64,000 nt of DNA. It comes from Iphione sp. A-MEVVRFRX5 (lineage: Eukaryota). Shown here in pieces: positions 1 through 53,801 of this stretch. The position numbers and the translations under genes are program-made. Numbering within the stretch: the stretch's first letter is position 1; each line of letters opens with the position of its first letter. The notes below the pieces were generated by a model. It was not told where the DNA came from. It did no database searches and saw only the letters and a program-made list of their open reading frames with translations. The stretch covers positions 84,320,001-84,384,000 of the forward strand of contig OZ320315.1 in assembly GCA_976226885.1 (NCBI GenBank), written 5' to 3'.

Positions 1-2700
1 CATTATCGATCTACCTTTATGATCTATAATTAAATCGGCTGGTTTTCTGGATTAGGTCAATATAAGGATAGCCCCAAATAGAACTTAGAGGGGATGTAGA
101 AGTCAGACGGGCATCCATACACATTTACTTTGCCCTGTACACACGTCAATGACTGGAACACGGATAAATAAAACGTATGCGATCAGTGTGTGCTACACTG
201 ATTGTTCACCATTCAAGTGTTGCTGCTGAACAAAAAAACCCATAAAACATACTTTAATTAATAAGTCATGACGCTTGAAGAGACCATATAAACATGAATG
301 AAATGGCCTTTTCATAATGTAGATTGGGTGGCAGGCTCACTCAGAAGCTTTTCACTGCGCACATCTTGTGTATGCTGTCATCACTAAACAGTGCGTTCAG
401 TGTAGATGGAAAAACACGCACACATTTAGTAAAACTGAATGCAGATACAGATTAAATCTACAGTGACGAGATAAAAAGAGAACGAATGAGACAGAGATAG
501 AACAGACAGACAACTAAACATTTGGACAGACATGAAGACAGAATTCGAGGTAAAGAGAGAAGAGACAAATAGCTGGATCAGAGAATCACCAAAAGGTCTC
601 CTTAGGTAATTCCTGATTCTGCGTCAATATAACCACATTTTCCTATCAGTTCCTTCGTGAAGCCATGGAGGGATAAAGGCATTATTTTATGGGTCTCCTC
701 CACGCGGTCATCCAATCGACGTAATCGACGTGGAGAGCGTTCGTCAACGGTACGAAAATGCTGATATAAACATCGGAACCTCGGTCATGCATATACCTGG
801 CCAAGATTGAATGCCAATGGCCGGCAGGTGACGAAAGTTAATGGGCGAAATGTGATCAAAATTTTATTACCCCAGCATTCTATAGATCATGCAATATGCT
901 CATACCAACTGGGGCATTATCCAATATGGAGGGACTGGCCCTGCGGGATATGGTGGTGCTGTTTGGTAACAAACTGGTGGGAATTTTGTTTGAAACTGCA
1001 AAGGGATTGATAAATACCATGATTGGCATCAAGTTGATGCTCATGACTTGAATTACACTTACATGTACTTGCAGTGCAATAACTTTCGATGTTTCATTTC
1101 TGTTAACATCAATATCTACTTTATTAAGCCTGGAAGAAACTAAACAAACTCACGTGTTACTGGGTGTTGTCAACTGTTTGGTTATTGCGGAAGAAAGCAG
1201 ACAAAGAAATGAAGGTGGATTGAGGCAAACATTGGTTTGAGAGCGACCAAATGCTGAGAAGGGTCTTGTCTGTCACTTGACAGACATGAATACATGAATT
1301 GGACATGAATTTGATGTGCAGGAGCAATTATATTCCTTAATCTCTTCAGCAGCAACGATATCCATGCTTAACATATACCCTTTTCTTTCATAGAAAATAG
1401 TGCATGAAATATCATCAACGTACGTGAGAAAAATTGGATGCCTTTTTGGTGGAAAACGGCAATATCAGACGAAACTGTTGTTATTTCAGTAAGAGATCAC
1501 AAATGGAAAATTTTAACAAAACAAGGTATGGTTAAAAAACAAACCGACCTCGACAATCCATCATGCCTGCACAGGGGACATCGGTATCGCATCAACACTT
1601 CAGTATACACAACAAACATTCAAAACAGGCCCAAAAAGCCGGGGATCACTCCTCTCCAGATCCGCGCCTCTCTGTCCTCACATCGAGCGGCAAGGATCAG
1701 CTTAGGACAGGAAAAACAACATCGGTGGCGACAGCTTGACTAAGGTTTGGGTTTTAACAGCCTGGCTTTTGTGTTACAAGTAAACACAAGTCGCTGTCTA
1801 CCTTTGGCCTCGGTGCTGTCGCTATCTGGTGCGCACAGGTGTTACAGACTGGGCACTCTGTCAAAGGTGCCTCTAATGCTACTTGGTACGAATGGGCAGC
1901 ACTGGGCATTTCTCTAATACGTCCTAACCTAAATTCCAGTAGAAAAAATACACTGGTCCATCAACGGTCCAATCTCCGCTTCTCTCTGCGGCGTGATGAC
2001 AAGTGTTACTGGTATTTACAGCACAGCGTTGAGCTACTGTTATGCATGATGGAGACAATTTGATGTTGCCTTATCACCTATAAACTACATACGGAAGAGT
2101 GTGTAAAATTACATACATGTGTGCATGTAGCATGTGCTGTACCACTCACTACAGCCCATTACACATGTGGACGTACATGTACATCTATACAGCAGGCAGA
2201 GTTGGCCACTTGTCATATGGGAGGCTCAACATGAGGTAGCGATGGATACAAAACGAACAATGGATGGCCAATTATTTTGGTCTATATGACATATCTAACT
2301 TATATATCTAATGTACATATAATATCGAAAAAAGTCGATGTTCGCCGCCCATTTATTTCATTTCATTTCATTTCATTGTATCTTTTACCGGGAATATATT
2401 CACCTATCATTAGTGAACTATTCCTTCATCGTTCTGATCGTCTCCTCGCCCCTTGCCATAGGGATACTGGCCAAACGACTCATAGCTATGATGGAACCAG
2501 CTAGTTAACACACGTTTAGTCTTGGCTAAGTAGACTGAGCACTGAGTATATTTTATGTCATATTACAGCTATAAAAAGGGTAGTCTATCTTATAGCCGAT
2601 GTATCTCCCACACCTGTTCTCTGTCCTCGATATGATAAATTGTGCAGATAGAGTTACTGGGAGCTGGCGGCTGTCTTTAATCAAAGTGTATTGTCCTTAC

Positions 2701-2756
2701 CTCCCCGATGAGGCATACCGTTTTTTGTGAAATCTTTTGTTTCTACGTGTACTCAC
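2701..2756 (-). other. Candidate recursive-splicing exon (RS-exon), 56 nt
   Basis: Minus strand: ctatttaatcttttttcttttcaatttcag|GTGAGTACACG...ATGCCTCATCGGGGAG|gtaagg. A branch-like TTTAAT, a long Y-tract and CAG are followed directly by the donor consensus GTGAGT. A second donor GAG|GTAAGG lies 56 nt downstream. An internal ATG at 2716 gives MPHRG plus 1 nt. Confidence 0.6.
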
Positions 2757-4010
2757 CTGAAATTGAAAAGAAAAAAGATTAAATAGCACGGTGGTTTTAT
2801 TAAACACTCCGTTCTGTTGAGAAAAAAGGATTGTGCACTGTATACAATGTACATGCAGCAGTTTATTCAAAGTGATTGGATTTTAAGAGCATATCTCCAT
2901 ACATTACATGTGGTATGGATGCGTTTACAGTCAAGATACCTATGCATCTACGTTTGCATATCATAAACAGAATCTGTGCCTGTCTTTATCAGTTCATGGT
3001 CATCAGAGTAGATTTGTACACCGTATGTTGATGTAAATAATTGCTGCTAGCAAATGTATATATGCAGATACAGAAAGCCAGTAATATATATGTATATATG
3101 TCACTACCCAGCCCGGGACGTGCTGGGTCTATCATAACAGTGAATATAATTGTTCTCTGACGATTAATTGCTTTGCCTCCGGGGAGATTTGAATGCTTCT
3201 AATGCCTGTGGACTACAGAGCTACAATCAGCCTTCTTTTCGTGGGTGCACGGCAATAGTAATATAGCGCTCCTAATATTCAAGAGACAAAATCTTTTAAA
3301 TCAAAATAGATGTGGAGTACATATCGAGTGACAAAGGCCCAACTAGAACAATTACTTAGGAACCTCCATTAAGGATGAAACTGAAGAACTCAGAGTCAGT
3401 ATTAATTAAAAGGCGTAGTCCTCGTCTAAGTCTATGGCATGGTTATTCTCTCCTGTTGAAAGTAATAGAATACGAGTCCAAATGGTTGAAGGACCGGGAC
3501 AGTAATATATGATGAAATATGCTGCTTGGGCACGCAGCATCTCAGTATTTCAATGTATATGACTGAAATGAAATTTTGCACACCCTGTTACAACATACAC
3601 GCAAGCAAGCACGCATATCCAGAGAAGCACATGAATACATGTATATAAATGTAGAATTTTATGGACATACACACATACATATATACATGTATATGCATGT
3701 ATATATGAATGAGTCAGTGTGAACATAAAAACTGAGTCTGGACGTAAGTCATTTAAACAGGACACTTTGTTTCCCTTCAGCGGTCGGCTATTCGTGGGTT
3801 ATTTTCCCCGTTGACGACCATTTGAAGGCTTGCCAACGCTGACCATATCAGTTGCGTGACCTTCCGACTATAAGCGATCGGCGCGCCCCACCGCGCTCCC
3901 ACCCAGGGTGGCTACACCATTCGACACCTTGACGACTAGAGGCCATCAGCCGCTGGCGTCCAGGTGAGATGTCATGTCACCTCACCATGCCACTAGCCAC
4001 ACCTGCACTT

Positions 4011-4691: not shown

Positions 4692-5203
4692 AAGTTAGCG
4701 TGTGGGGGTACGGGCCTGCCGTGATCACAGCTCCGTGAGTGCTAGGCCACGATTATCTCTCCGGCCATGCTGGGCCGACAGTAAATTTCCTACCTCAAAT
4801 ACGAGGAGCATCTCGTCGCCCGACCCGGGATATGGCCCGGCACAGCCATCTGTGTGTTCGACCTGCTGCTCAGTCTCTTCCTAGTTGCTCCACTACTGCT
4901 CACTTAAGGTCAACAACCATAAGCTCAACCTTTACTTAAGACACACATATCGACGGTCAATAACATTTTTGTGGTAAATTGCAAGCGAACACGAATTGAA
5001 CTAAACCCAGACGGACATGGAATGTCCTTCAATTATTTGCAAATCAATGCTTTTAATCACCAGGCAAAAATGCAATAGAGACACGATACGAACCAGCGAA
5101 TAGGGGAAGTGGCCCTTTTTTGTCCAGCAACGTACAAGATTCTAGGGAATGGGAACTAATCAAGACTGGAATGTATTTCAAGATGACGATGATTGTCACA
5201 GCC

Positions 5204-5217
5204 GTCGCCATGGCGAC
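5204..5217. promoter_or_regulatory. RFX X-box (perfect palindrome GTCGCCATGGCGAC)
   Basis: 14-bp perfect palindrome matching the X-box consensus, in a CpG-rich segment. Confidence 0.6.
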
Positions 5218-5462
5218 CATGAGAGGTGTCCTTCGGAGACGAGAACGGTATCAGCTGACGTCTCCCGGCATGCACCTCTCCTCCGGCAGGCAGACGCCAG
5301 GAGTATTGACAGGCCCGCCTGTCCGTCGCATGTCGAGCAGGAACAGCATGTGAACGCACGTCATGTTTCAAAGAGACATCAACATGTGGGAGCGAGCCAG
5401 CCGCCGTAACTCATGTCAATGACGGACTCTGGCGCAGCGTTAAGCTCATGTAACGAGCGTAA

Positions 5463-6091
5463 GGCCCGGTTTCCTTATGTGCGTAGCCATGCGTGCGTTG
5501 CGGTGCGGGAAACGCACCCATTTTATGGTCATGCTTATTTTAATATGGGATGTTCCTTATCTGCGGAGAGCTGCGGCTGCGGAGAGCTGCGGAGAGCTGC
5601 GGTGCCCGTTTTCGGACCGTTCCCGTAAATTTCACGCACATGCACAGCAACGCACCTGTATATCTTCATTTTGACTCACTTTGGCTCATTTTGACTCACT
5701 TTTGGATGTTGATACCACACATATCCGCACATTTCCGCACAACGCGGTTTTTTTCCCGAATTTTTACGCACATTTTTGCCATTTTTTCGGCCAAATTTGC
5801 ATGAAATATGCGTTGTTCGGGACAATTTGCATGAAATTTGCCGTTTTTGGCCGAATTTGCATGAAATATGCGTTTTTCGGGACAGTTTGCATGGAATTTG
5901 CCGTTTTTCGGCAGTTTTTTTCCGTTTTTTTCATATTTTCTAGTCATATACGCACACAAACGCACGCATGGTTTGAGGACACCCCTCTGCGTTGCTGTGC
6001 GGTGAAAGCACAACGCATCCAAACGCACTGGGAACGCACGCAGACCTCTCCGCAGCTCGCCGCATACCACCGCACGTAAGGAAACCGGGCC
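5463..6091. mobile_element. Non-autonomous PIF/Harbinger-type DNA transposon (MITE), 629 bp
   Basis: Left end GGCCCGGTTTCCTTATGTGCG (5463-5483) and right end CGCACGTAAGGAAACCGGGCC (6071-6091) form a 21-bp TIR with one mismatch. TAA flanks both sides (5460-5462, 6092-6094). Subterminal GCGGAGAGCTGCGG repeats are present. No transposase ORF. Confidence 0.9.
5796..5914. repeat. Four 30-bp tandem units (ABAB) inside the MITE
   Basis: Units start with TTTGCATG at 5796, 5826, 5856 and 5886. Units 1 and 3 are near-identical, as are units 2 and 4. The repetitive ORFs at 5681-6079 and 5696-6226 derive from this repeat. Confidence 0.9.
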
Positions 6092-6978
6092 TAAAGGTTG
6101 GTCAGGATTGACGTTTGGAGCCTCGCATTTAATTCGAATGCCTGAGGACGGGGGGCCCATCACAGGAAAGACAGTGCGAAACATCGTTATCCAACAGAAA
6201 CCGATGTGAAATTGATATATCCTCATGACGGTATGCCCTTTCCTTAACGAACCGTACTCTCTACATTTAGTCCTTACAACGAATCAGCTTATGATTGATG
6301 ACTATCACGGACATTCCTCTAATGGCAAGAGTAGTTGAATTTTTAATATAATGTATTGCGTTACCTATTAATAGAGAATGATGGGTGTCGACTGATTAGG
6401 TTGTTGAGCAATGTCTACCTTCTAACGGCGCAAAAGCAACAGTAGAACCCAGACATTTAGTCCGGTTAACATTTTGGTGGATAACACTAAACAATGTATA
6501 TCAAAGAGACAAATCACCCCCTGAAAATATCATATCTCTTGTTCTATTTTGATGATTAATAGGGTATTGCTTTACACATGTTCACATGTGCTGTTAATTC
6601 TTAAACATATATAGGCGTATAAAACTGCCATGTCTTTTTTTTTTACCGAGAAGTTAATGAAGGATAGGTAAGTGTCGAGTAGGTTGGAGGCCGTCAGAAT
6701 TTCTCCTCCACTAGCATTGAAACGTGGCCAGATCGAATTGAGTTGATGACTTTAAACCGATCGCAGTTATCCAAGCCCCTTCACCTTAATTAATACTCGT
6801 CGCCGTCCAGACCATTGGAGGTTATGGAGATGTGTGTTGCGGAGCCGCTGTGTGGAAACACAGAACGTAAACTTTCTTTACGTCATGCCCGTAGTCTGAG
6901 ACGTAAGCGCGTCCTGGCGGATGGATCTAGCAACATAATCACATGTCTAGACCCCTCCCTTCCGCTTCCGCTGCTCTC

Positions 6979-6993
6979 GTTGCCATTGGTAAC
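6979..6993. promoter_or_regulatory. RFX X-box (GTTGCC-ATT-GGTAAC)
   Basis: Both half-sites match the consensus, with a 3-nt spacer. Confidence 0.55.
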
Positions 6994-7477
6994 GCGTCCG
7001 TGTTAATATCCTCTCCGTAGGCAATATGCGCGCAGCCTTTCTGTAAATACCTCAATCAGAGGGATTTTCTGAGCGAGGTGGGGACTCGTCGCATTAGGCG
7101 CTACTCCAGCGAGGGCCCCCCGACCAGGCGCCTGGCCGGGCCTCTCGGGGAGCGCCAGCCGGGCGCCACGCCCAGGGAAAGACCCGCCACCGACGCCCGC
7201 TAAAGGCTGTGGAATTCATAGCTGAGGACGGCTGCTGTGGGGCGAACCGGGGCAGAGTATGGCGCCAAAATCGCCGGGGCGCAAATCGCCCTGGCTCTGC
7301 GCCTGTCAATCGAGTGCTAATACGAGATCGGGGGGGGGGGGGGCGGGGGGGGGGAGAGGGCGACCGGCAGAGCTGCATTTACACACGTCTCCCAATGAAA
7401 GCGGGCATTAACTGGCTCTGGCTCGCCAGAGGCGCGCCGGCAGCGGGGGAGAGGAGGACAGCGGAAGCCTTCCTTAC

Positions 7478-7721
7478 CTGGCGGCTGGCAACTTGTTGAC
7501 CTTGCTGTCATAATCACAGCCGCCGGCTGAGGACCCTTCAGAGATAACACCCAGAAATGAGGCGGCCCCCGCGAATAGATGGCTGGCGAGGCCGACCGAC
7601 CTGCCGCATCCCTCGATGTGTCAGATGACAGGAAGTAGGCGCCAACATTCTGTGTGGATACTTTACTAATCTCAGCAATTAAAATGCCAACCTCCGTGCG
7701 GCTCCGACCAAAAGCTATCAT
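7478..7721 (-). CDS. Candidate alternative first coding exon, product unknown (MTARSTSCQPP from the ATG at 7511, or 81 aa from the ATG at 7721), phase-1 end
   Basis: The frame is open from ATG 7721 through ATG 7511 to the strong donor CCAG|GTAAGG. GC/CpG-rich context. No recognisable homology. Confidence 0.3.
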
Positions 7722-8643
7722 AGAAACTGTCCATTAAGCTACAAACAATGCAAGGATCTTGTCTGCTGATCATATCGACATTGTACTTCTGAAAGAGGTA
7801 GAATATAGGTTATGAAGCTTATTATGGCGCCCTGTAGTAGGAGTCATTTTGCTTCGAGTAAATATAAGGAACAAGCGAGCAACAGATGTTTATGATACGT
7901 ACTCCACACAGACTTACGAGAGATGCTTATGACTGCATTACCATTGAACATCATGCCCAATACATGTACATGTACATCTATTAAGATAAGTTTCTTGTAT
8001 GTATATGTAATATCCTGATCCTGGCAATGCTGCCTGGTTGGTGCACGTTAGCCTCGCTCTGTGACCCGATTTGATTTATAAAATATACTTATGATTCTAT
8101 TACTATCGGAGATCATGTCCAATTGTAGATATTTCCCTATTCGTGTACATGTATAGCTGTATATTACTTATGTCAGAAATTCGACACGGAGTTCAAGCAT
8201 GAGCTGTAAGACGAAGGCGAAGGTAAGACTCACATTGCTGTCTCTTATAAAATCCACATCGCACTCATCCTCGTACAGATGTGTACTTTCCACTTCCGAG
8301 TGCCGAACATTCATCGGTTAAGTCGCAAATATTGGAGCGCCCGCTGGGTTTATAGAGAAGCGACCGTCGGTGGATCGTTAAAGTCCTCCGGCAACCCCCT
8401 AGCTCCGAAATAACAATAGCCGTCCACACCAGAGCCCTGCTTCCTGTCTACTGCCAGCGACTAATTTCGCCCTCGTCTTCTAGCTATCCCCTTCCCCTGC
8501 CTTCTCGCTCTTCGCTGCCGTGCAATCCTCGAGCCCAAATTACTGGCTTCACAATAGTGTCGGTTATAATGGCCTCTGCAAGCTTCCTCCGCCCCCTCTT
8601 CTTGCCATCTCAGAAAACGACAGAAAAAGGGGGAGCGCCACCC

Positions 8644-8657
8644 GTTGCCATGACAAC
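8644..8657. promoter_or_regulatory. RFX X-box (GTTGCCATGACAAC)
   Basis: One base from the canonical GTTGCCATGGCAAC, in a CpG-rich segment at about 8330-8700. Confidence 0.65.
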
Positions 8658-9082
8658 CGTAGACCCCTACAGGTGTTCTTTTTGGCGGAAATCAATTTCA
8701 TGCGAGATGTGCAAAAATACCAAGGCAACTTTGGGGCGATTTTTTTTCGCTGAGATTACTTAAGTAAACCAAGTCGACCTTCCCTACTCGTGCCATTGTG
8801 AAGCAAAAAGCATGAATAATGGCCATTATTTGTCGTACTGTTCAACGCGCCTGATATGTTACATTTTAATGGTGACGAGGACTGGAGGGCAATTTTAACG
8901 GGTCAATTTGAACAAGTTGACGATGCCTATTTCGTGCGCGGTGAGCAAGAAAACTAGCATCGGGCGTTGAGTGATGCAGTTGGCCTGGCACCTGGTCAAG
9001 CGTGTCCGCTGACGCGTGCACGGCTTTAACGGCCCGCCGGTTAGTAGATCGGCAGGTGGAAAGCATTGCACCTACTTCTTAC

Positions 9083-9400
9083 CTGAACTTGCTTGGCTGG
9101 CGGCAGTGGCGGCACCTCCTGCGCGCAGAAACTAGGCTCTGCCTTCCGCTGGAGTTGTCTTTGTCTCTGCCTCAGGTGAGCACGGAGTGCGCCAACTCGT
9201 TTGTAAGCCTAGGGATGGCCCGCTTTTCTTCTATAGCATTCACTGGGAAACCTGGGTTTTGCCACCTGTGTATATGTCTGAAGTGAGGTATCCTCCGTGC
9301 GTGATAGGGGGGATGAAAAGAACTATAAGGTAAAGACTTGAGATGCGATGAGGTGCGGTGGTGTTGGCGGCGGCTGACAGGAGACTGGTGATATATGGTA
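9083..9400 (-). other. Candidate non-coding first (5' UTR) exon
   Basis: Ends at the strong donor TTCAG|GTAAGA. A CCAATCAG box lies at 9460-9467, upstream on the minus strand. Stop codons lie upstream of the donor in all three frames. The 5' boundary is approximate. Confidence 0.35.
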
Positions 9401-9481
9401 GAGCCGGCGGGCGAGTCTGATGGACGGAGACAAGATGCGGCCACAATCAGCCACCTCCGCCAATCAGGTGTGCTCCCTCAC

Positions 9482-9720
9482 CTCCGCTCACCGCCTGACT
9501 CTTCACGACGCCGTGGCGGCAGCGGTGGTGGTGGTGGTGGTGGTGGCGCTGCAGTAGGAGGTGGTTGTGGTGGTGGTGGTGGTGGTGGTGCGTTGGCGGC
9601 GATGAGACGGATGGTGGTAGCGTCAGCAGGAGCGCATCGCACGCGGGGGCAGAACGGCAGCGTGCGCGCTGCCTAAGTTGTCGTGCGACAGACTGAGTGT
9701 CGCGACGTGTAGCGCATCAA
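9482..9720 (-). other. Candidate non-coding first exon in a CpG island, containing (ACC)n tracts
   Basis: Tandem donors GAG|GTGAGG (exon end 9482) and GCG|GTGAGC (9492). Very GC/CpG-rich. The 5' boundary is approximate. Confidence 0.35.
9524..9590. repeat. (GGT)n trinucleotide tracts
   Basis: Two (GGT)7 runs. They account for the poly-Gly stretch in ORF 9395-9676. Confidence 0.95.
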
Positions 9721-12125
9721 CGAGACAATACACGCACACACATAGCGAGCACTGGCGCCACCACCCCCTCCCTCCCCATCTTTTTACGATGTGTGTATAT
9801 TTACCTCGCTAAGGACAGGTGACGTACAACACGACGAGTAATTACACATGTCAGACCCAATCTACTTCGAAATTCTCCGGAGAAGCTCACCTACCTCACG
9901 TGACTTATCACGACTCGCCCTCAAGGTGCACGACGCGCAGTTTTCGTAATTTTACAACTTTGTTTCCTAGTTTCCTCTAGACACGAATAGACCCCATCCA
10001 TTATCACTTCGTCTAGCTCACCTTGCCTACTTACGCCGCGTGTCCGCACGGGCGGCCGATGCTATATACAGTTAATGTTGATTGCCTGCCGGCTGTAAAG
10101 AATCATGTACTTATCCACTCGCGGCGACGACGCGGCGAGAACACATTATCAATGTAGCAGTCGAATCAAGTGTTTTCATCTCCCACAAAAGCCTCCCACA
10201 GCTCACACTTCCAGCAGGAATCAGAGGGGAAAGTGCGGGAGCGTGCTACAGGGCCAACTGGCGAACTACGTGCGTCGTAGCCGACGTCGCCGTGCCGACT
10301 GATTGGAGCGGTAATCAGCACACAGTAACATCGATCTGCCCGTCGTGGCACGCCAATGGTCCGCGGCGCCCGTTGCCGAGAGTTCCAACGGGGAATGGAG
10401 CTGTACTTGGAACTGGGGTGTGTAACAGGCCCTGGGCTTCTGGCGCGAGAAGAAAGAGAAAGAACGGAGGGTGGGCGTGGAGGTAGAGGGGGCCGGGCGC
10501 GGTGGCGGGGGGGGGGGTGGGTTGCCAGGAGGAATGCGATAATGTTCCGGGATTCGGTCCATCTTCTGATAGTATCATGTGATATTGACTCTACGTCAAT
10601 AACCCGCCAATATTGAAAGCGGCGCCTCCTGCCCTCAAACCCAAGGGAGATATGCACTTGTGCATTATCGCATCCTTCCTGCTCCTTCAACTCGTGTTCG
10701 GACCTACTTGCTGCTACCGTTGTACTGGTGGAGCCCCCCACCCCAACCGCCCCCTGTGCTATAGAGGCGGTTAAGGGAATGGCGTGAGGGTGGGTAGTAT
10801 TGGAGAGGGGAAGGGAAGAACTTCACTTGGATCATTCAGACAGGCATTGGGTCAATATGAGCGCACGTTGCGGCCTGTCGTGTCACCACCGCCATTCTGC
10901 CAGGGGGGCTGTCAATGACTCAAGTGCGGCTGTGCATAGTACTCAGAGTCATTCAGCAACGATGGTTTGGAGAAGCCAACCCCCACCCCGCTTCTCCATC
11001 AGGGCCTCCCGAACAGGATGGACTAATGGAAGGGGGTAGGGCAGATGGAGAGCAAACAGTGAGGAGGTGTGGGTCGGGCGAGGCTGCATCTCACGACCCT
11101 CTCCAGCAAGCTTGCGGCAAATAGTAGTGGACTGCCTGATGAGGCTCCTCCCCATTTCTCACGTCCTCCAACCATGGTCGCCTACTGTGGACATAGCGCC
11201 AGCATGCCCACTACCGAGGCTATTTAGCTGGTGTTGACTCAGCTAACCATTACAGCACAAATGAGTTTGCCACCAATATGCAGTCAAACATGTCATTGTT
11301 GAGGTGTATTAATAATGTATACACATGGGCTGTTTCGCCAGCGCACTTTTTTTTTATTTGTTTTGTTTAACCACAATTACGGATTAATCTATACACTTCC
11401 CCTAACAAAATGCAGTGCAAAGTGAACACAAGGATTTCCCTTTGTAGAAGATGGTTACACATTGCTACATATACTATGGACAAAAGCATCATTCATCCAA
11501 GCGACATGACTCAATAACTCCATATAACGCGATGACTCAAGACTATATATTACAGATACAGCCTAAACTGTACGCGTCTGTTCTCTCTTTAACTTGTGGT
11601 GAATATAACTTGGAATATTGAAGACGAGTTCCACACCCCTTTGGGGTTTTATTTAACGTTACGAGTTAAATGTGCGATGCGAGTGTGTTGCTGCCTGAGC
11701 TGTTGCATATGCGTGTTATGTACGATCTATGGGGGGAACATGTTCGATGTCGACGCCGATGTTGTCTCTCACTATTGAAAGTGTCCTAAAGCATCTTAAA
11801 AGTAGCGGCCTTCCGTCTCAAGTGTAAACTCGCCTGCTGGCAGGGAGCCCCACTATTTGGTCGGCGTCGGCAGCAGCAGCAGCGGTAGCCGCAGCCCGAT
11901 AACGATCGGTTCATTTCTTGCCGAAACCATTCCCACCGCTGACATTTCCAATATGTAGCGGGCAAGCTTTTCATTCCACTATCTGCCACTTGTATGATTG
12001 GTGATCCGGCTCGACGTGGCCGAGCGCCGCGTCGCCGGCCCGAGGAAGAGGTTCACAAGGAGATTTCCTCCTGCGCCGACTGCGAATGATGATGTCAGAT
12101 GAAGCTGACAACCTGCCGACGCTAG

Positions 12126-19247: not shown

Positions 19248-21547
19248 GCAGCCCACCTGGTCGGCCTCGGTGCCCAGGCGGATGCTTTGAAGTACCGCCA
19301 CCTCCCCCTATATCGTGGGGTGTTTTGACTAGGGATATCTATGGTAATTATGTCCACACGTGATCGTAAGGGGGGGGGGGGTTAGCGTTTGACCAGTGTT
19401 AAGGAAGGATGTGTATAGGAGGCGCTGTGTGGTAAGCCCTGATCTCCTGAACTTCTCAACCTAATGGTTCTTTATTAAGGTATTTAAATGCGGCGTCCGG
19501 TGAGAAAGCGGCGCCGTTTAAGTGCCTTTTGTCACTGAATAAAGCAGGACCTGCTCTCCAAATTAAATCGACTTTTAGTAGGACGTGACCGTGAAGTGGC
19601 AAAAGATACCGGTGCAAACCAAACCTAACCAGTTTCATCCACTGCCCTGACCATATCAATTCTCTCTGTTCAATTATTCTATTACCTCTATTATTTAGGC
19701 CCTATACCATTCTATGACTCTACTTTCACATCTCCCATGGGTCACCCTGCTGGATTAAGCTGCTGAATCAAGATGGGATGAGTAATAATTCTATATTACA
19801 TAAGAACATGGTTACCAAGCTACCGAGAAGCTTATGCTTTTCAGACGATATGAGTCATTATGTTTATTCTCCTCGCTTCTCTAGAGAGGAAGAATGTTTT
19901 AGGGGTACAATAACGTAAATATTATAAAGTTTTAAAAAACCCAAACATTGGTGGATTTCCATTGGTAGATTTCGAAGGTAATACGGCGTTTTCACTTGCT
20001 GCCAATCAATTTGCGATTTTAATATATAAGGGTTAAATTCACGGGATGGGTTTAGAGGCGTTTCGGAGTACAACAGCAAGGGTTACGTTAGGGAGGGCCA
20101 TATGTAACCTTACCTAACCTGTCGAGCTACTCATAGCACATTCATCGATCACTCAGTCACGCTACCTGTCGAACAGGTATGCAATCATTAACTTACTATG
20201 CATTCAAGCATTGTCCGCGACGAGCCACAGTCAGCCTGCCATTCGGTGAATGCTCGGTGTCGCTTTCATTCAGCTGATCAGTTACAAGTCACCCATTTAA
20301 AGCACTCTATAGGTCCAATCGTCTAAACTAAGGCGCACAATTAATTGAACGCACTAAGAGGAGACTATGTTGATTTCAGTCACTGTCTAAATTTACACAC
20401 TTTCAAATATAACGTCTTTGTTTCCACTTATAGATTTCAGTCTATTTTTTCTCCTACCGCGAGCTCCACGAAAAACATTCACGCATGGCACTCACCTGCA
20501 AGGGAACAAAGAAAACACCTTTTAAAATTTCACACGCAGATATTACGCATACATAAATACATTTATATGTATACAAGGTATATATTTTAGGAGACACTAT
20601 GTTTACTTTGGCGTTGGTTAACATTATACATTTGCCTGATGGGAAACACCGGAGGGCAGATGGGGAATTTTTAATATTGCCGTCTTGTCGCAGCGAAAGG
20701 CCGTCAATGTATTCGTCATTGGTTTTTGTTTTGTATGATGGATCACCATTAGAGCAGGACATCCATCACGGCGACGCAAACGCTCTCCCCAACTTCACTG
20801 AACACTTGTCTCAGGTGCAACGCATTACTGGAACGGCATTCCTACAGAACCTTCCTGGGATGCAGACAGATACACGGACAGTGCTGTGGGAACAACCTAT
20901 GTCCGATCAATCATAACCCATAAAGGAATAACAGAGAGGCCAGAAATGACAGACGACGAGGGAACTAGACACTTGGCACTTAGAATCTGCCCAAACAAAA
21001 GCGCTTGAGCCAGTGCGAGATCTCTTTTTTTCGATCAATGGGTCTTCTTGGTTGTCATCTCCTTTTCACTGTCCTGTCAGCGTTTGTGAAAAAGATAATT
21101 GATAGCCATCATAAATCTTTTTATATGCACATTCCTGTCAGTTAAACTATGAAGAATCTCAAACAACTATTAAAGCAACGGATTTTAAACCTCTCTTCAT
21201 GTATCCTTTAATATTACTCGGCAAACTACATGTACTACCCAGTAGTCTATGTAAGTCTATGTAGTGTACAGAAATTCAAAATGCATAAATAGACAATCAA
21301 GCCATTTAATAGCATAAACCATCTCAACGTTGTATGCATCAGGAGTTAGCAGGTCAAGTCCGACTGACTCGGACCTACGCACAACGTTTTCCTTTCAACC
21401 TGACCTTTAGGGAGACCTATCAGCGAGGGAACTTTGACTGTAGCCTCCACTCTTTTACACGTTACATTTTCTTTTCGTCTGATTTTTTTTCTACACTTAA
21501 GTACCTCTGGGAGCCGGTTACTGTTTACCAGACATTTGGACCCAGAC

Positions 21548-21900: not shown

Positions 21901-23469
21901 TTTGACAGAGGAGATGACAGCCACAGAAGTATAACAACCCAAACAAGATGATGTTTTCCTGAATTACTGTGTGGGAGAGAATGGTTCATATCTCACTGTT
22001 ATATCTATTCGATGTTTACGATATGTTTGCTGTGAAGCACGAAGTAGAACAAAGACGTTGTAGGGATAAGGAAACGCATTTGTAAGGCACTGGTGGGGAG
22101 TGACATTTTGATTGTACCAGCCAAAGGTTCTGTCACGGAGGCCCTGCCAGACCAGCAGCGGCCAGCTTTCTAGGACACAATGGTCATGTCTGCCCAACGT
22201 CAGGCTACGTCGCCAACCTTGACTGATGATTCAAATTACAAGAATCTTGATGACTGTTGGCATTACGGTTGTGTGCAAATGTATTGTGAATCCCGTGTGT
22301 CTGTGTGTTTGTGTGAATCTCTGTCTGTGTATTACGATGATGTATGAGGGCATATCAGAGTTCGTTGTGGTCATCTTTCAGCACCGTACCACCTCCTCCA
22401 ACCTGACAACAACACCGCATCCCTCAATAACAGGCGACGAGACGGATCAGGACCATTTTGTGGTCTGAAAATAACCAATTGGACTGGTAGCAGATTATTT
22501 CATCTAACGAGCGCTCCCCGCAAGATGACATTTCTTGGAACACCACTCCTTTCGAAACCGCAGTGGAGGTAATGCTTTCAAACACAGCCCACTGACAGGC
22601 TGAGGGGTAAGCAAAGGTCATTATAGGTCAGGGGCAGTCTCCTGGAGCCGTGTTTTAAGTAATGGGGTGTCTGGATGTCATAAATGAAATGGATGGGCAG
22701 CCGGGGTAAGGTGCATACGCTACGCCTTCTGGAGGCGAGATCGCCACACTAATCATTTATCTCCTTCACCGATATGCCACCTGTTCCAAGCAAATTTCCG
22801 GTACACTTTAGGAGTGCGAGGTGTAATCGGCAGTAATGGAAACTGGACCGAAATCCGGTATTATGTTTCAAAAAGGATACGGCTAGCGTGCAGGGTGGCT
22901 GTCAGTGTCAACTATTAAACACAGAACCAAACCACACTCTAACCTATGGCGGTATGGTTTGGACTTTTTAAGTTAAATTCAGGGACATAAACGTGATTAA
23001 ATCACATATGTCATTTTAATAGCTCCCGCCTGTTCCTTACACGGATAAACTAGCACAGCATAGACATCTGTTTGCATGTGTGGTGGAGATATGCTTCGTG
23101 TGAAAAGTTGAGAACTTGATGCTATTGCTGAGGATAAAATAGACGTTTGAAAGATTAATGAACGTTGCTTTGTGTCTGGATTGTGACTGCTTCCGGAAGA
23201 TCAATGGTTCAAGCGGGGCTAAAAAAGATCACGGGGAACCTTATGGACCACATCATGAATACTGAACCCCGACCTATAGTGGATCAGGTGGCACCGCTGT
23301 GGTATGCAGTTCCTGGTCTGATGCATATGTATATCGGCCTCTCTGCCTTTGCTCCGTGGTCCTGGGCTGGACACCCCCCCCCCCCGCCCCCGCGCTCCAT
23401 GTTGGCAGTTCTGTTGGGTGAAATCCACCCAGAAAAGATCGGCCCCCTGCAGGCCGGAATAGCCTTTAC

Positions 23470-33680: not shown

Positions 33681-36566
33681 CGTGTGTGGCGAAGGTTTCA
33701 GGGCAATGCGCCCTCGAGAGGACCGGCCTGGATGTAAGCTGGTCTATCACAAAAGGCGCTTTGGTCACAATATCCTATTGATTACAGGAAAAGTTGACTC
33801 TGACGTAACACAGGTTAAGGTTCTTTGGCAGTGGGAAAGGGGAGACCGACATGCAAATGCGTGACATGTTTTTGTAATGACCTCCTACTTGAAGAAGGCT
33901 ATTTTGACTCTCTCATTTTCTGTGGGGTATGTAATCATTCAGAAGAAAGCTGATTTGTGCCTCCTAAGTGTAAATATACTCCCGAGTTGGTTTTCAGGGA
34001 AAAAAATCAGTCGACTTCAAGAGCTATCAACGTTCTTTGTGTGTGTTTTTTTTTATCGTGAAGCTTTTTGTGTTATTTCATCTCTTGCGAGAAGGCAAGA
34101 AATGTCGGCTGCCGAGCCAAAACATGTGCTTTTGTTAGTTTTCAAGGCCTTTTGTCCGCCTCTACTGCTTGCATGTTCGCATGTTTGAGTCGGCCATGCT
34201 AATAGTCAAATCATGTCGTCCGTACCGTGTGCACTGGGGCAAGGGGAAGGACCTACTTTGAACAAAGCACATTAGATACATTATGTAGCGACCGCAGAAG
34301 CCTCGGTCCGGGTGACATACAAAAAAAAGTGTTACTAAGCGCACATTGAAGAATTATTAGCCGCATCTGCTGTACCGACTGACCTTAAGTCACTGTCATT
34401 TGCATAAAGCTTACGCTGGGATGACTGCATAAGATATCCTTGTGTGTATCCTATGTTTACAACCATAGAGCGAGAGGAAGAAACACATGTATTTAGGCGA
34501 GGTCTCATAGTACAATTATATCATGCGGCACGTTTCCGATTGCTTGCTTTCGTCATAAGTATAGGACGGGGTAAATGTTATTATAACTGTCCTGTGATGA
34601 TGTATGAGCACTTTTAAAGGCCCCTATGTTGACATTACCGGCAGTAATAGCATAGCCTCCATGTACTTTTGGGGCTGCACGTGTGCATGATGTGTGCTAT
34701 ATCTACGTTTTACGTTCTATTTCCGACCGAACGTCCATTTTAAGTCAATGTTGCAGATGTAAGCGTGCTTACAGATGGTAAAGATATGTGGATATAAGTT
34801 ATCCAGTGTATTCGGCACTTTCTTGCATTCATGTAGACCCAATGTAACTACATCACAGGACTTATATATACATAATTATAAATACACATGTACAGTGGTG
34901 TCGAGCAGAACTAGCATCCCATTTCTTTGATGGGTTACACCTATGTTATGAACAAGTAGTTGATCCTGCCTCCATCCTCCAATCTCCTACTTCGGACTCG
35001 TATATAAATATAGTATATCGCATTTTATTACTGTTGACTATTTTGATCATGTGCCATTAGGGCTTTGTTGTATATAAGGGCCGAACCTATGTAGTATATA
35101 ATCACCCTGTCTAGAGTTTTACACTGCCATGGATCTTCCTTATCCTGGTGATAGGGGAATGTGAGACCTTCTCATACAACCCTTCTCTTCAAGGCTTAAA
35201 CGCCACAATATACACATACATATGTACACCTACGACACAATACCAGAAAATGTAATTTTGGCCATCATCACACAACACCGTCACAAAGCAAAACTGGAGC
35301 AAACAAAGAAGCTTTCCAAATAACAACGCAGAGACTGATGTTGACGCCGTTCTCCCTCGAGCCAGCGGTGATGCTGGACCTGTGCCCAATGTTTCAGCTG
35401 TTGCCAATCATGATAACCTGGCCGGTAGAGGGATCTGTTATCGCGGCAAAACATGGACGCTCCAACGGCTGGGCTTCAGCAATGAACCCACCTGCTCAAC
35501 GTGGACCCGTTACTACGGAATGTGGACAACGTAGCCATAATGAACTCGAGGCCTCTTGACCAGAGGTGCTTTTAGCGTCAGATAATGTCAATGGATTAAA
35601 TTTAAAATGATCATGTCCTTGTAATACTCACGATGCGACCACATCTCGACCGTTCACTAACCGCTTTCACTGTTAATCTTGCCCTTTCACATTTTTCTGT
35701 ATTTTTAAGTCTAAAAGAATTAACTTCCCCTTAAGGAAGAAGGAACAAATCATAATCTGCATGGTAACGGCAATAATGGTCAGTAACTCGTGATCGGTTA
35801 CATAACTCTATGACACTAGCCCCAGGAGGTAACATAAAAGACAGCCATGAAAGATCAAAAATTTCACAAGTGGATTCAATGTTAACATTGAGAGACCTGA
35901 CAGTGATAATATAACGTATAGAGGACCATCGCTCAACACTGTTGCCTCAGAAATATGGAATGTAAAATATCTACGATACGAGGTGATCGGGATATGGGCC
36001 AGACCCACCGACAACAATGACACACGAATACCAATGCGGGTAAACCACCACACTAAAACACCGGCCACTTGTAAAACCGGGTGAAATGCTTGTGCACATT
36101 ACTTGTGTGGCGCGCCACAGATGCATTCCTTCGACGCAACTGGTTTATCAACAACAAAAAACGGCGCTAACTAGACAACCGGCAGCGGGACAGAATGGGG
36201 GGGGGGGGGTGTGACCAGCCCGCGAAGAGCAACAGTCGTTGACGTTCGACGTGCCGCCCGACGCTCCGATCTCTCACTCTGACTGGTTGACCTGTAGAAG
36301 GTGAATCAACCGAGAGGTGAGACACCTGCTCCTCATCTGGCTACCCCACACTCCCCTAGGTCCTTCTTTCTCCGCCGTAAACAGTCACCCCCTCTTCACC
36401 CTCTGCGGCGTCTCTGGCTTTCTCTACCTTTACATCTCCTCCTTGTCCTACAAGGGCCTAGCTTGGGAATCCTGCTGCCCTGATGGGCCAGCGGGACGCA
36501 GCAGCAAGTCCACCGAAGGAGGGGGGTCACTGCCATTTTGGGGGCCTATCCTAAGTCAACTGAAAG

Positions 36567-51505: not shown

Positions 51506-52757
51506 CGGGGTGAAGGGAAGAGGAGAGACATAAACCTAGCAGCTTGGGGATCGAGGCGAGGCACAGGAGATGGAGGAATGGCAGAAGACCGACCCTGCCT
51601 GCTCTGGCAGAATTAAAGGCACTCTAGGTCAGCAATCTGCAAGGGTTAAACAGTTCTGCCTACATTACGTACATGTACTGTGATTGTTATCTTTCGTGTT
51701 AAGAGTATCTCACAGACCTGTATAATGAAGATTACTATGTCCTTCAGTGGGTCATACATGTGTATCTAAGCATGTACATTGGCGGCCCATTGCAAGTATG
51801 AATGGGGAGGTCCTTTTTATGAAACATTACATTAAAAAAGCTACTCATACTGATGGGAACTGCTTCCTCTCTCTTGTTAGTAGTCTCTCTCAAGTTCACA
51901 TGCTTTTGTTGAGCGTACTGTTCTCCCGTTGTATACAAGGACTCAGACGGCCCCTTTTCAACATCCATGTCTCTTAGTGTTCCCCTGATATATGTATGCA
52001 TGGTCAACCTTTCTGTTTTGTATAGGAATGTATGACCGTGTGATTGGGACGAAGGTCTTTCCAGCAGGACACCTGTATGTACCACGCCCAGCTTGTGTCA
52101 TACACTATTTCCTTGCCCTGTTCTCATGTGGCTTTCCCCAGCAGCCGTCCACCCACTGGTCATCCATCTACGCCCCCATATTTGCCGGCCATCCTCCTGA
52201 GTTCCAGTTCTCCATTACCTCCAACAGCCCCGACCAGTCCTCCCCCAACTCCCAACCCCCTTTTCCCCTAGTGCTTAGTTGACCATTGCTGTCGAGCCGA
52301 CATGTGTTGGCCATAACGTGTAATTTCCGTGCACCTGTTGTTAGGGGGCGGGGTTCAGCGTTTGGTACAAAGACCTTCAACGTTCACACATCCAGATCTG
52401 GTAAAGATCGGCCTGATTCAAGCAAGTATCTCTAAAATGCTATGTGTGTTTCACAGTGTTATGCCTGTCTTTATCTAAAAAAAAGTACATGTACGCTGTA
52501 TCTGGTGGAAGGTCATAACTGCGTACAAAATATTTTGAACAGAGTGTCCCTACAAGAAGCATATTAATATCACCTTTAGTTTGAGAATGATGACAGCCTG
52601 TTTACCCAAAAGAGAGAGGTAATTAATCCATATTTAAGCAATCAGACGCGGAGATAATAGCATTTAAATGAAGCTGTAGCATATATGTATGCTGTTGCTC
52701 TGACTTGGCCTTGAAATTTAGAGCTGGCATCCTGTAGACACATGTTATGCTACTTAC

Positions 52758-52802
52758 CCAGTTGGAAGGTTTGAGGTATTTTTCGGAAGCCTGAGGACTC
52801 AC
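52758..52802 (-). other. Candidate recursive-splicing exon (RS-exon), 45 nt
   Basis: Minus strand: tttgtaaccttattctctatgctttcag|GTGAGTCCTCAGG...CCAACTGG|gtaagt. A branch-like TGTAAC, a Y-tract and CAG are followed directly by GTGAGT. A second consensus donor lies 45 nt downstream. Confidence 0.6.
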
Positions 52803-53801
52803 CTGAAAGCATAGAGAATAAGGTTACAAATGACTCGACCGGGAAGAGAGATCCACGGAGAGGTAATTGAAAACAATATATGAGCCATCCACCTATATCT
52901 TGTAGGGCAGGTAACAGTAATTTGACATGAGGAGAGCAATTTCCCTACATATGAGAAGAATTCGGTCACACAGCACCTAATCATCACATATCCAGAGACA
53001 CAACAAACACCTGTCTGTACGGTTTCCTAGATATACACAATGGTACACTTTATGTTGCAGTCACCCTCGATGCTATTGTAATCAAAGAGTTTGTGTCGTC
53101 CCCTCTGTATTAGTGAAGACCAGTGGACGAGAAGTCGGACACATCAAAGGGTTTTTAGTGAACACCTAAAAGCAGGGTTTCTTATAACCTAATTATGATC
53201 ATATTACTGAGAAGCCCTATGAAATCAATGTATTGGTGTTCTCTGTAGCAACACTTGTCAGATTGGATGCTGAGCGATGCTCCGGTGTTGTGACAAACAA
53301 CACAACCCTTGTCCTCCCAGCTTAAAGTGTAGAGGCATGATCGGACTGAGTGCGCGGTCAATGTTCCCCTCGCCATAGGAAATAAACAAGTGCATGTATT
53401 ATTCACATCTGTGTACGTGCATTATCACCTGGAGGGCTTAAAATGGAAACGCTGTACATTTGGTACCAAAGATGTGTCTGTGTTGTTGTACATGTATATG
53501 ATTCTTCAGGACTTAAAGGTGTATTTTATAGTGGATGAGCAGTGAAACAATTTGTTTAAGTCGAATTCCTGAAGGACGACAATATTTCATTCGTTTCATA
53601 AATCTATCACAAGCGTCCTCGAGAGAGTATGCAAGGGCAGGTGGTGTGACCCTTCAGATGCTATCAACCGACACTTTTAGGATGGCAGTGCGGGCACTTT
53701 TGAGTGGCTAGATATTCAATACAAACCGCCGGGTCACCTTTGCAAGCAAAACCTAAAGGGGTCTTTCTCAGTCTGCCAAGCGCGAAGATCGCATTGATCG
53801 C

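What the first reader, a model, noticed from the sequence alone, without database searches (positions are those of the whole stretch)
2701..2790. Candidate recursive splice site with an RS-exon that could act as a promoter-dependent switch
Seen: on the minus strand, a textbook 3' splice site (branch-like TTTAAT, Y-tract TCTTTTTTCTTTTCAATTT, CAG) is followed with zero spacing by the 5' splice site GTGAGT. A second strong donor (GAG|GTAAGG) lies 56 nt later. Established: this AG|GT plus downstream-donor layout defines Drosophila ratchet points and vertebrate RS-exons in very long introns. Inference: entered in phase 1, as from the candidate coding first exons at 7478, 33397 and 39568, the exon reads xGT GAG TAC ACG TAG, a premature stop. 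Those transcripts would therefore need recursive skipping. The exon also carries its own ATG (2716, MPHRG) that exits in phase 1. Transcripts from the non-coding first exons (9083, 9482, 23470, 42453) could include it and use it as their start exon. I do not know of recursive splicing having been characterised in this kind of invertebrate.
Basis: partly seen in the sequence, partly recalled or inferred. Interest (0 to 1): 0.72.

Follow-up and report, generated by a model that had tools for sequence, protein, structure and literature searches.

The report
Probable recursive splice site, unproven
A spot on the minus strand joins a strong intron-end signal directly to a strong intron-start signal, one of three such spots on that strand, so a very long intron is probably removed here in steps; no RNA data could be obtained, and the proposed promoter-dependent switch has no support.

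Summary
On the minus strand a 17/19 pyrimidine tract and CAG (ends 2757) abut GTGAGT (2756-2751). GAG|GTAAGG follows 56 nt later (2701|2700). The phase-1 TAG and the ATG at 2716 are as described.

It is not chance. The window holds three perfect Y-tract+CAG|GTGAGT sites (2756, 20495, 52802), all on the minus strand and none on the plus. About 0.02 per strand are expected. They are not repeat copies. Two of the three have a strong donor 45-56 nt downstream, against a background of 0.025 per site.

The window has no recognisable coding sequence, which fits a giant intron or multi-promoter region. The 37-codon frame across the site matches none of 1.84 billion proteins.

My best reading (about 0.5) is a fly/vertebrate-type recursive splice site with a cryptic, frame-breaking 56-nt RS-exon.

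The "promoter-dependent switch" is not supported. Five of the seven proposed first exons end in CAG and would rebuild the same strong 5' site. U1 pairing is -13.6 kcal/mol for that site and -10.1 for the RS-exon donor. This holds for "coding" and "non-coding" first exons alike.

No RNA run was listed, and no host gene or orthologue could be reached, so use of the site is untested.

The scan has flagged this kind of site before on other DNA of this genome.

The parts
2778..2783 (-). Branch-point-like TTTAAT. The candidate branch A is at 2779/2780, about 22 nt upstream of the AG, with no AG in between.
   Evidence: Read. It matches 6 of the 7 positions of YNYURAY. Assigned by inference only.
2757..2778 (-). 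3' splice site: pyrimidine tract tcttttttcttttcaatttc followed by AG (2758-2757).
   Evidence: 17 of 19 pyrimidines, the best Y-tract among all AGGTRAGT sites in the window.
2751..2756 (-). Recursive 5' splice site GTGAGT, directly abutting the AG (zero spacing).
   Evidence: U1 duplex energy is -13.6 kcal/mol once preceded by CAG.
2701..2756 (-). Candidate cryptic RS-exon of 56 nt. It shifts the frame, has stops in two of three frames (TAG at 2745-2743 for phase-1 entry) and holds an ATG at 2716-2714.
   Evidence: The 37-codon open frame across 2813-2703 has no match among 1.84e9 protein representatives.
2695..2700 (-). RS-exon donor GAG|GTAAGG, weaker than the recursive donor.
   Evidence: consensus score 14 against 17, and a donor this strong lies 25-80 nt downstream of only 2.5% of random positions. 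U1 duplex energy -10.1 kcal/mol.
2814..2830 (-). Second acceptor-like site, tccttttttctcaacAG|, 57 nt upstream. It would make GTGAGT the ordinary donor of a 57-nt exon (2813-2757). This is the basis of the rival readings.
20490..20520 (-). Sister site ttttctttgttcccttgCAG|GTGAGT (G at 20495), with 16/19 pyrimidines. Only weak donors lie downstream (+38 GTAGGA, +95 GTGTGT).
52752..52830 (-). Sister site ttattctctatgcTTTCAG|GTGAGT (G at 52802). It has a 45-nt RS-exon (52802-52758) and the donor TGG|GTAAGT (52757).
   Evidence: It shares the 12-mer core of the 2756 site, but the flanks are unrelated.

Best explanation
The site at 2757|2756 on the minus strand is a recursive splice site (ratchet point) with a cryptic RS-exon. 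It is one of at least three such sites on that strand, which divide a very long intron or multi-promoter 5' region of an unidentified minus-strand gene.

Proposed steps, all inferred:
1. The 56-nt RS-exon is defined by U2AF and U2 at the TTTAAT/pyrimidine tract/CAG, and by U1 at GAG|GTAAGG.
2. The upstream exon is spliced to 2756, which removes the upstream intron segment as a lariat.
3. The junction rebuilds xAG|GTGAGT. This site pairs better with U1 than the RS-exon donor and wins the competition.
4. The RS-exon and the remaining intron are removed together, leaving no trace in the mRNA.
5. If the RS-exon is included by mistake, it adds 56 nt, shifts the frame or introduces a stop, and would expose the mRNA to nonsense-mediated decay.

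Shown here: the sequence layout, its non-randomness, its strand bias and the relative donor strengths. Not shown: transcription of this strand, any splicing intermediate, the host gene, and conservation.
For: - The layout is confirmed.
- Three perfect Y-tract+CAG|GTGAGT sites lie on the minus strand and none on the plus, against 0.02 per strand expected. The empirical P is 5e-4, and 3 of 50 strong acceptors are followed by GTRAGT against 0.024 expected.
- YAGGTRAGT occurs 6 times against 2.06 expected, 5 of them on the minus strand.
- The three sites share only the core motif, so they are not copies of a repeat.
- Two of the three sites have a strong donor 45-56 nt downstream. The background is 0.025 per site, which gives P of about 0.002 for two of three. 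This matches the '~50 nt cryptic RS-exon' of PMC8605326.
- The rebuilt donor is stronger than the RS-exon donor: -13.6 against -10.1 kcal/mol.
- The RS-exon is out of frame and has stops in two frames, as described for cryptic RS-exons.
- The window has no recognisable coding sequence. The longest stop-free stretch is 218 codons, and the 150 longest have no credible Pfam hit. This fits a giant intron.
- The 37-codon frame across the site matches nothing among 1.84e9 proteins.
Against: - There is no RNA evidence. No sequencing run was listed, so junctions, saw-tooth coverage and lariats could not be examined.
- The host gene, its exons and even transcription of the minus strand are not established. 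Counts of poly(A) signals show no strand bias.
- Conservation could not be tested.
- The site lies only 2-7 kb downstream of a CpG-rich island at about 5-10 kb. For transcripts that start there, the upstream segment would be short for recursive splicing.
- A second acceptor 57 nt upstream allows GTGAGT to be read as an ordinary donor.
- The third site (20495) lacks a good RS-exon donor.
- With looser criteria the plus strand also shows two acceptor|donor sites, at 9176 and 48776.
Confidence: 0.5

Rival explanations
1. It is an ordinary expressed small exon, either 5'-UTR or a poison cassette, and the intron is not removed in steps. The exon could be 2756-2701, which happens to begin with GTGAGT. 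It could be 2813-2757, which uses GTGAGT as its normal donor. It could be 2813-2701. If several of these forms are used, the AG|GT would be a dual-specificity splice site, serving as acceptor in some transcripts and donor in others.
For: - Exon-like pairs built on this site are among the best-scoring in the whole window: 2813-2757, 2756-2701 and 2813-2701.
- 2813-2701 is open in one frame.
- Annotated exons that begin with a 5'ss-like motif are common in deuterostomes and are kept in the mRNA by the exon junction complex (PMC6224609).
Against: - The open frame has no protein match among 1.84e9 representatives.
- 56, 57 and 113 nt: two of the three lengths break the frame.
- A 17/19 pyrimidine run directly before a donor is unusual for exon sequence.
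- The same layout recurs at two unrelated places on the same strand. This is more economically explained by selection for the fused motif itself.
Confidence: 0.22
2. It is a non-functional chance motif, or a strong U1-binding or decoy site with no splicing at the AG.
For: - About 0.04 perfect sites per window are expected by chance. Over the 709 windows of this genome that carry notes, that is about 28 chance sites, so a single site is not remarkable.
- There is no evidence of expression.
Against: - Three sites on one strand of one window has P of about 1e-6 per strand-window under the shuffle null. It remains below 0.01 after correcting for all the windows scanned.
- The RS-exon donors are also non-random.
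Confidence: 0.18
3. The RS-exon is skipped by transcripts that start at coding first exons (7478, 33397, 39568). It is included by transcripts that start at non-coding first exons (9083, 9482, 23470, 42453), which then use its ATG at 2716 as their start codon.
For: - The frame arithmetic is correct.
- The donor-like sequences exist at the stated places.
- A comparable binary switch is described for vertebrate RS-exons (PMC5126111; aCADM2 in PMC6224609).
Against: - 7478, 9083, 23470, 33397 and 39568 all end in CAG and would rebuild the same -13.6 kcal/mol donor. 9482 (GAG) gives -12.2.
- Only 42453 (GCG, -10.8) approaches the RS-exon donor at -10.1. The predicted outcome therefore does not follow the coding/non-coding split.
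- None of the first exons is verified, and they are not paralogous.
- The phase of the downstream exon is unknown because it lies outside the window.
- A 5-codon ORF that starts at a chance-level ATG is weak evidence.
Confidence: 0.05

Closest known systems
Drosophila intronic ratchet points with cryptic RS-exons (Ubx, kuz, Bx; Hatton 1998, Burnette 2005, Duff 2015, Joseph 2018/2021, PMC8605326)
   Same: - A long pyrimidine tract and CAG fused to GTRAGT.
- A short RS-exon of about 50 nt that breaks the frame, followed by a weaker donor.
- Several sites on one strand, tens of kb apart, in DNA without exons.
- The predicted outcome is '0-nt' removal that leaves no trace.
   Different: - The core here is GTGAGT at all three sites, not the GTAAGT that I recall as preferred in flies (from memory, not checked here).
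- The organism is not an insect. Earlier scan notes call it a lancelet.
- Use, conservation and the host intron are unproven here.
[quoted passage not shown] 2015, as summarised in PMC5126111 and PMC6224609)
   Same: - RS-exon definition comes first.
- The rebuilt 5'ss then competes with the RS-exon 5'ss.
- The RS-exon carries a stop codon.
- Inclusion is thought to depend on what precedes the RS-exon.
   Different: - According to Joseph et al. 2021 (PMC8605326), only nine fully suppressed intronic sites were definitively noted in mammals. From memory, those lie in very long introns (over 100 kb).
- Here the segments are about 18-32 kb and there are several sites, which is more fly-like.
- The sequence gives no basis for a promoter-specific outcome.
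Annotated RS-exons repressed by the exon junction complex (Blazquez et al. 2018, PMC6224609)
   Same: The exon begins with a 5'ss motif, and this class is reported to be prevalent in deuterostomes.
   Different: Those exons are normally kept in the mRNA and are mostly coding. Here the exon breaks the frame and has no protein match.
Dual-specificity splice sites (AG|GURAG used as either a 5' or a 3' site; from memory, Zhang et al. 2007)
   Same: The site has the same core sequence. It has an acceptor 57 nt upstream and a donor 56 nt downstream, so it could serve either role.
   Different: Membership needs transcripts that show both uses, and none were available.

Membership tests
Recursive splice site / ratchet point with cryptic RS-exon | A 3' splice site (pyrimidine tract and YAG) directly abutting a 5' splice site (GTRAGT) | tested here: met
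   17/19 pyrimidines, then CAG|GTGAGT with zero spacing.
Recursive splice site / ratchet point with cryptic RS-exon | Lies on the sense strand inside a long intron of a transcribed gene | tested here: inconclusive
   The window has no recognisable coding sequence, and the sister sites are on the same strand. But no host gene, exon or transcript was identified, and no RNA run was listed.
Recursive splice site / ratchet point with cryptic RS-exon | A downstream donor that defines a short RS-exon of about 50 nt | tested here: met
   GAG|GTAAGG at +56. A donor this strong is expected at 2.5% of random positions.
Recursive splice site / ratchet point with cryptic RS-exon | The rebuilt ratchet donor is stronger than the RS-exon donor | tested here: met
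   -13.6 kcal/mol after a CAG exon end, -12.2 after GAG and -10.8 after GCG, against -10.1 for the RS-exon donor; consensus score 17 against 14. The identity of the upstream exon is assumed.
Recursive splice site / ratchet point with cryptic RS-exon | The RS-exon is out of frame or carries a premature stop | tested here: met
   56 nt, with stops in two of three frames.
Recursive splice site / ratchet point with cryptic RS-exon | Splicing intermediates: upstream-exon-to-RS junction reads, saw-tooth intron coverage, and lariats | not testable with these tools
   The look-up of sequencing runs listed no run, so read laying could not be used.
Recursive splice site / ratchet point with cryptic RS-exon | Strong conservation of the acceptor|donor motif while the RS-exon body diverges | not testable with these tools
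   No DNA of related species could be reached. Exact-ORF look-ups found nothing on record and the metagenome scan found nothing.
Vertebrate-type binary switch (RS-exon included after particular promoters or exons) | The alternative upstream exons fail to rebuild an efficient 5' splice site | tested here: not met
   five of seven candidate first exons end in CAG and one in GAG. Only 42453 (GCG) comes near parity. The split does not follow coding versus non-coding. The exons themselves are unverified.
Dual-specificity splice site | The same AG|GT is used as a donor in some transcripts and as an acceptor in others | not testable with these tools
   The sequence allows it, given the acceptor at 2814 and the donor at 2700. 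There is no transcript data.

The most novel reading that the evidence does not exclude
The three minus-strand sites in this window may form one chain, possibly joined by a fourth that another reader noted about 20.8 kb beyond the window end. The chain would remove an intron of 80 kb or more in segments of about 18-32 kb, in a non-vertebrate chordate. That would place fly-style, multi-site recursive splicing with cryptic RS-exons at the base of the chordates. It would argue that the mechanism is ancestral to bilaterians and did not arise separately in insects and vertebrates.
Probability: 0.4. Interest if true: 0.6.

Novelty: new member of a known kind. Interest (0 to 1): 0.42.

Why it matters
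Recursive splicing has been shown experimentally in Drosophila and vertebrates. I found no paper that describes it in amphioxus/Branchiostoma. The cross-species survey of RS-exons in PMC6224609 covered sea urchin, Ciona and lamprey but not a lancelet.

A cluster of perfect, same-strand acceptor|donor sites with RS-exon donors gives a concrete and cheap prediction to test. One RT-PCR for the intermediate, or one total-RNA library, would do it. The result would show whether an invertebrate chordate handles long introns the fly way (many cryptic sites) or the mammalian way (few cryptic sites and many annotated RS-exons).

The value of this one site is limited. The scan has already flagged many sites of the same kind in this genome, and nothing here goes beyond sequence statistics.

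Tried and rejected
- **RNA evidence.** The look-up of sequencing runs on window:1-10000 with kind rna listed no run. Read laying therefore had no run id to work on and was not called.
- **Host gene and orthologues.**
  - No ORF over 218 codons was found, and the 150 longest stop-free stretches have no credible Pfam hit. The one marginal hit, TgpA_N at E = 0.0065, I take as chance.
  - Exact-product look-ups for four long ORFs found nothing on record.
  - A 31-nt exact scan of metagenome contigs found nothing.
  - Rfam gave no hit.
- **Coding-exon rival.** The 37-codon frame across 2813-2703 had 0 hits among 1.84e9 protein representatives. This is a weak negative, because the query is short and only representatives are searched.
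- **Repeat or transposon origin.** An alignment of the three sites shows no similarity beyond the core. The window has no repeat family covering them. The scan's own index has no look-alike.
- **Strand of transcription.** Counts of poly(A) signals show no asymmetry. The 5'ss-like motifs show only a modest excess on the minus strand.
- **Paralogy of the proposed first exons.** 7478 and 39568 do not align.
- **Neighbouring notes.** They gave no gene name.
- **Sibley et al. 2015.** The paper (PMC4471124) is not held. Its model is cited through PMC5126111 and PMC6224609.

Full report
**Observation.**
- A branch-like TTTAAT lies at 2783-2778.
- An uninterrupted pyrimidine-rich tract, tcttttttcttttcaatttc, follows, with no AG in it.
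- CAG ends at 2757 and GTGAGT starts at 2756.
- After 56 nt (2756-2701) comes GAG|GTAAGG, with its GT at 2700.
- Phase-1 entry reads xGT GAG TAC ACG TAG, with the TAG at 2745-2743.
- The ATG at 2716 reads MPHRG and exits in phase 1.
- The 56-nt interval has stops in two of three frames and is not a multiple of three.

**Is it more than chance?** I listed every AGGTRAGT in the window on both strands. There are two on the plus strand and seven on the minus.
- Three of the minus-strand sites are preceded by at least 15/19 pyrimidines and CAG: 2756 (17/19), 20495 (16/19) and 52802 (15/19). No plus-strand site qualifies.
- In 1000 shuffles that keep dinucleotide content within 4-kb blocks, the mean count of such sites is 0.02 per strand, and no shuffle reached three.
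- An empirical null gives the same answer. It uses the real frequency of pyrimidine-rich 19-mers on the minus strand (2.5%) and yields P = 5e-4 for three of seven.
- Seen from the acceptor side, 50 strong acceptor-like sites lie on the minus strand and three are followed by GTRAGT, where about 0.024 are expected.
- The tool's own shuffles give 0.08 expected against 2 found for YYYCAGGTGAGT, and 2.06 against 6 for YAGGTRAGT, five of them on the minus strand.
- A scan-wide correction matters. At 0.04 chance sites per window, about 28 isolated perfect sites are expected across the 709 windows of this genome that carry notes. One site alone would not be remarkable. Three on one strand of one window remains significant after that correction.

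**Not a repeat.** The three sites share only the core motif. Their flanks do not align. No repeat family in the window covers them. The scan's index holds no look-alike.

**RS-exon layout.**
- A donor scoring at least 14 of 17 on a weighted MAG|GTRAGT consensus lies 56 nt after 2756 (GAG|GTAAGG) and 45 nt after 52802 (TGG|GTAAGT).
- A donor that strong occurs within 25-80 nt of only 2.5% of random positions, so two of three has P of about 0.002.
- The site at 20495 has only weak downstream donors.
- Joseph et al. 2021 (PMC8605326) describe this layout for fly ratchet points. It consists of a tandem acceptor|donor and a cryptic RS-exon of about 50 nt that is generally out of frame and poorly conserved. 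The ratchet donor is usually stronger than the RS-exon donor.
- I checked that last feature with U1 duplex energies, using the textbook 5' end of U1. CAG|GTGAGT gives -13.6 kcal/mol and GAG|GTAAGG gives -10.1.

**Context.**
- The window has no recognisable coding sequence. The longest stop-free stretch is 218 codons and lies in GC-rich DNA.
- The 150 longest stop-free stretches give no credible Pfam match, and Rfam finds nothing. This fits a giant intron or a multi-promoter 5' region.
- CpG observed/expected is highest (0.86-1.16) at 5-10 kb. That suggests an unmethylated island, possibly a promoter, 2-7 kb upstream of the site on the minus strand.
- Poly(A)-signal counts show no strand bias, so the direction of transcription rests only on the splice-motif asymmetry.

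**Rival: an ordinary exon.**
- A second good acceptor (tccttttttctcaacAG|, AG at 2815-2814) lies 57 nt upstream. GTGAGT could therefore be the normal donor of an exon 2813-2757. The whole 2813-2701 could also be a 113-nt exon with one open frame.
- I searched the 37 codons of that frame against 1.84 billion protein representatives without a word index and got no hit at E of 0.001 or below.
- This is a weak negative, because the query is short and only representatives are searched. It does speak against a conserved coding exon.
- A 5'-UTR exon, a poison cassette or a dual-specificity site cannot be excluded without transcripts.

**The 'promoter-dependent switch'.** The donor-like sequences at the seven proposed first exons exist, but nothing shows that they are exons.
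- Their last three bases are CAG (7478), CAG (9083), GAG (9482), CAG (23470), CAG (33397), CAG (39568) and GCG (42453).
- Five of the seven, including two of the four 'non-coding' ones, would rebuild the identical CAG|GTGAGT (-13.6). GAG gives -12.2. Only GCG (-10.8) approaches the RS-exon donor at -10.1.
- The known mechanism for such a switch is failure to rebuild an efficient 5' site (Sibley et al. 2015, as summarised in PMC5126111; aCADM2 in PMC6224609). By that mechanism the sequence predicts skipping from almost every proposed first exon. It gives no coding/non-coding distinction.
- For 33397, the first ATG of that stretch ends in phase 0, and only a later ATG gives phase 1 (read).
- The two most similar-looking first exons (7478 and 39568, both CAG|GTAAGGAA) are not paralogous.
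- The next exon downstream lies outside the window, so its phase is unknown.
- An ATG in a 56-nt stretch is close to what chance gives.

**What could not be done.**
- The look-up of sequencing runs listed no run for window:1-10000. None was listed, which does not mean none exists. Read laying therefore could not be used.
- No DNA of a related species could be reached. Exact-product look-ups for four ORFs were not on record, and a 31-nt exact scan of metagenome contigs found nothing.
- Use of the site, strand of transcription, host gene and conservation are therefore all untested.

**Earlier notes of this scan.**
- The same reader noted the 52802 site (s1-334945), and I confirmed its sequence.
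- Another note (s1-339640) reports a YAG|GTAAGT site with a 61-nt exon about 20.8 kb beyond the window end. I could not read that region. If it is real, the spacing of the four sites would be about 32, 32 and 18 kb.
- Several follow-ups on other pieces of this genome reached the same kind of conclusion, 'probable recursive sites, no RNA data' (s1-334794, s1-342839, s1-353865, s1-334859, s1-317812). One of them calls the animal a lancelet.
- These are unchecked notes and I did not count them as evidence. I could not confirm the species from this window.

**Literature.** I found no paper that links recursive splicing with amphioxus or Branchiostoma. The evolutionary survey in PMC6224609 used seven species and no lancelet.

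**Verdict.**
- The best reading is a recursive splice site with a cryptic, frame-breaking RS-exon, in a chain of at least three on the minus strand. My confidence is about 0.5.
- It is a new member of a known kind, of moderate interest.

Noticed in passing
window 20490-20520 (-): A third perfect site, ttttctttgttcccttgCAG|GTGAGT with the G at 20495. Unlike the other two, it has no good RS-exon donor within 150 nt.
   Followed up: partly
window 5783-5911 (+): A tandem repeat of 30/60-nt units. It carries the POU octamer ATTTGCAT at exact 30-nt spacing (5795, 5825, 5855) inside the stretch with the highest CpG observed/expected ratio in the window. It may be a promoter or enhancer module.
   Followed up: partly
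window 5000-10000: A CpG-rich island (CpG observed/expected 0.86-1.16, GC up to 0.57) in a window that otherwise sits near 0.7. It is a likely unmethylated promoter region just upstream of the site on the minus strand.
   Followed up: no
window 7330-7354, 10507-10517, 19370-19381, 36197-36209, 39287-39301 (G runs on +); 23374-23385 (C run): Six homopolymer G or C tracts of 10-15 bases. The 7478 and 39568 regions do not otherwise align.
   Followed up: partly
window 9176 (+) and 48776 (+): Two less perfect acceptor|donor junctions on the plus strand: ctgcctcAG|GTGAGC and cccgcgcAG|GTAAGC. The second also closes a well-scoring 124-nt exon-like interval, 48652-48775.
   Followed up: no
window 906-995 (-): An exon-like 90-nt interval (ccctttgcAG|TTTC...CAGTTG|GTATGA) that is open in two frames. 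One of them is the phase-1 frame, which stays open for 89 codons (883-1149). Its donor is weak and there is no homology evidence. It could be tested as the next exon downstream of the site.
   Followed up: no
window 9524-9590: A (GGT)21 microsatellite, which reads (ACC)n on the minus strand, inside the CpG island and next to the donor-like site at 9482.
   Followed up: no
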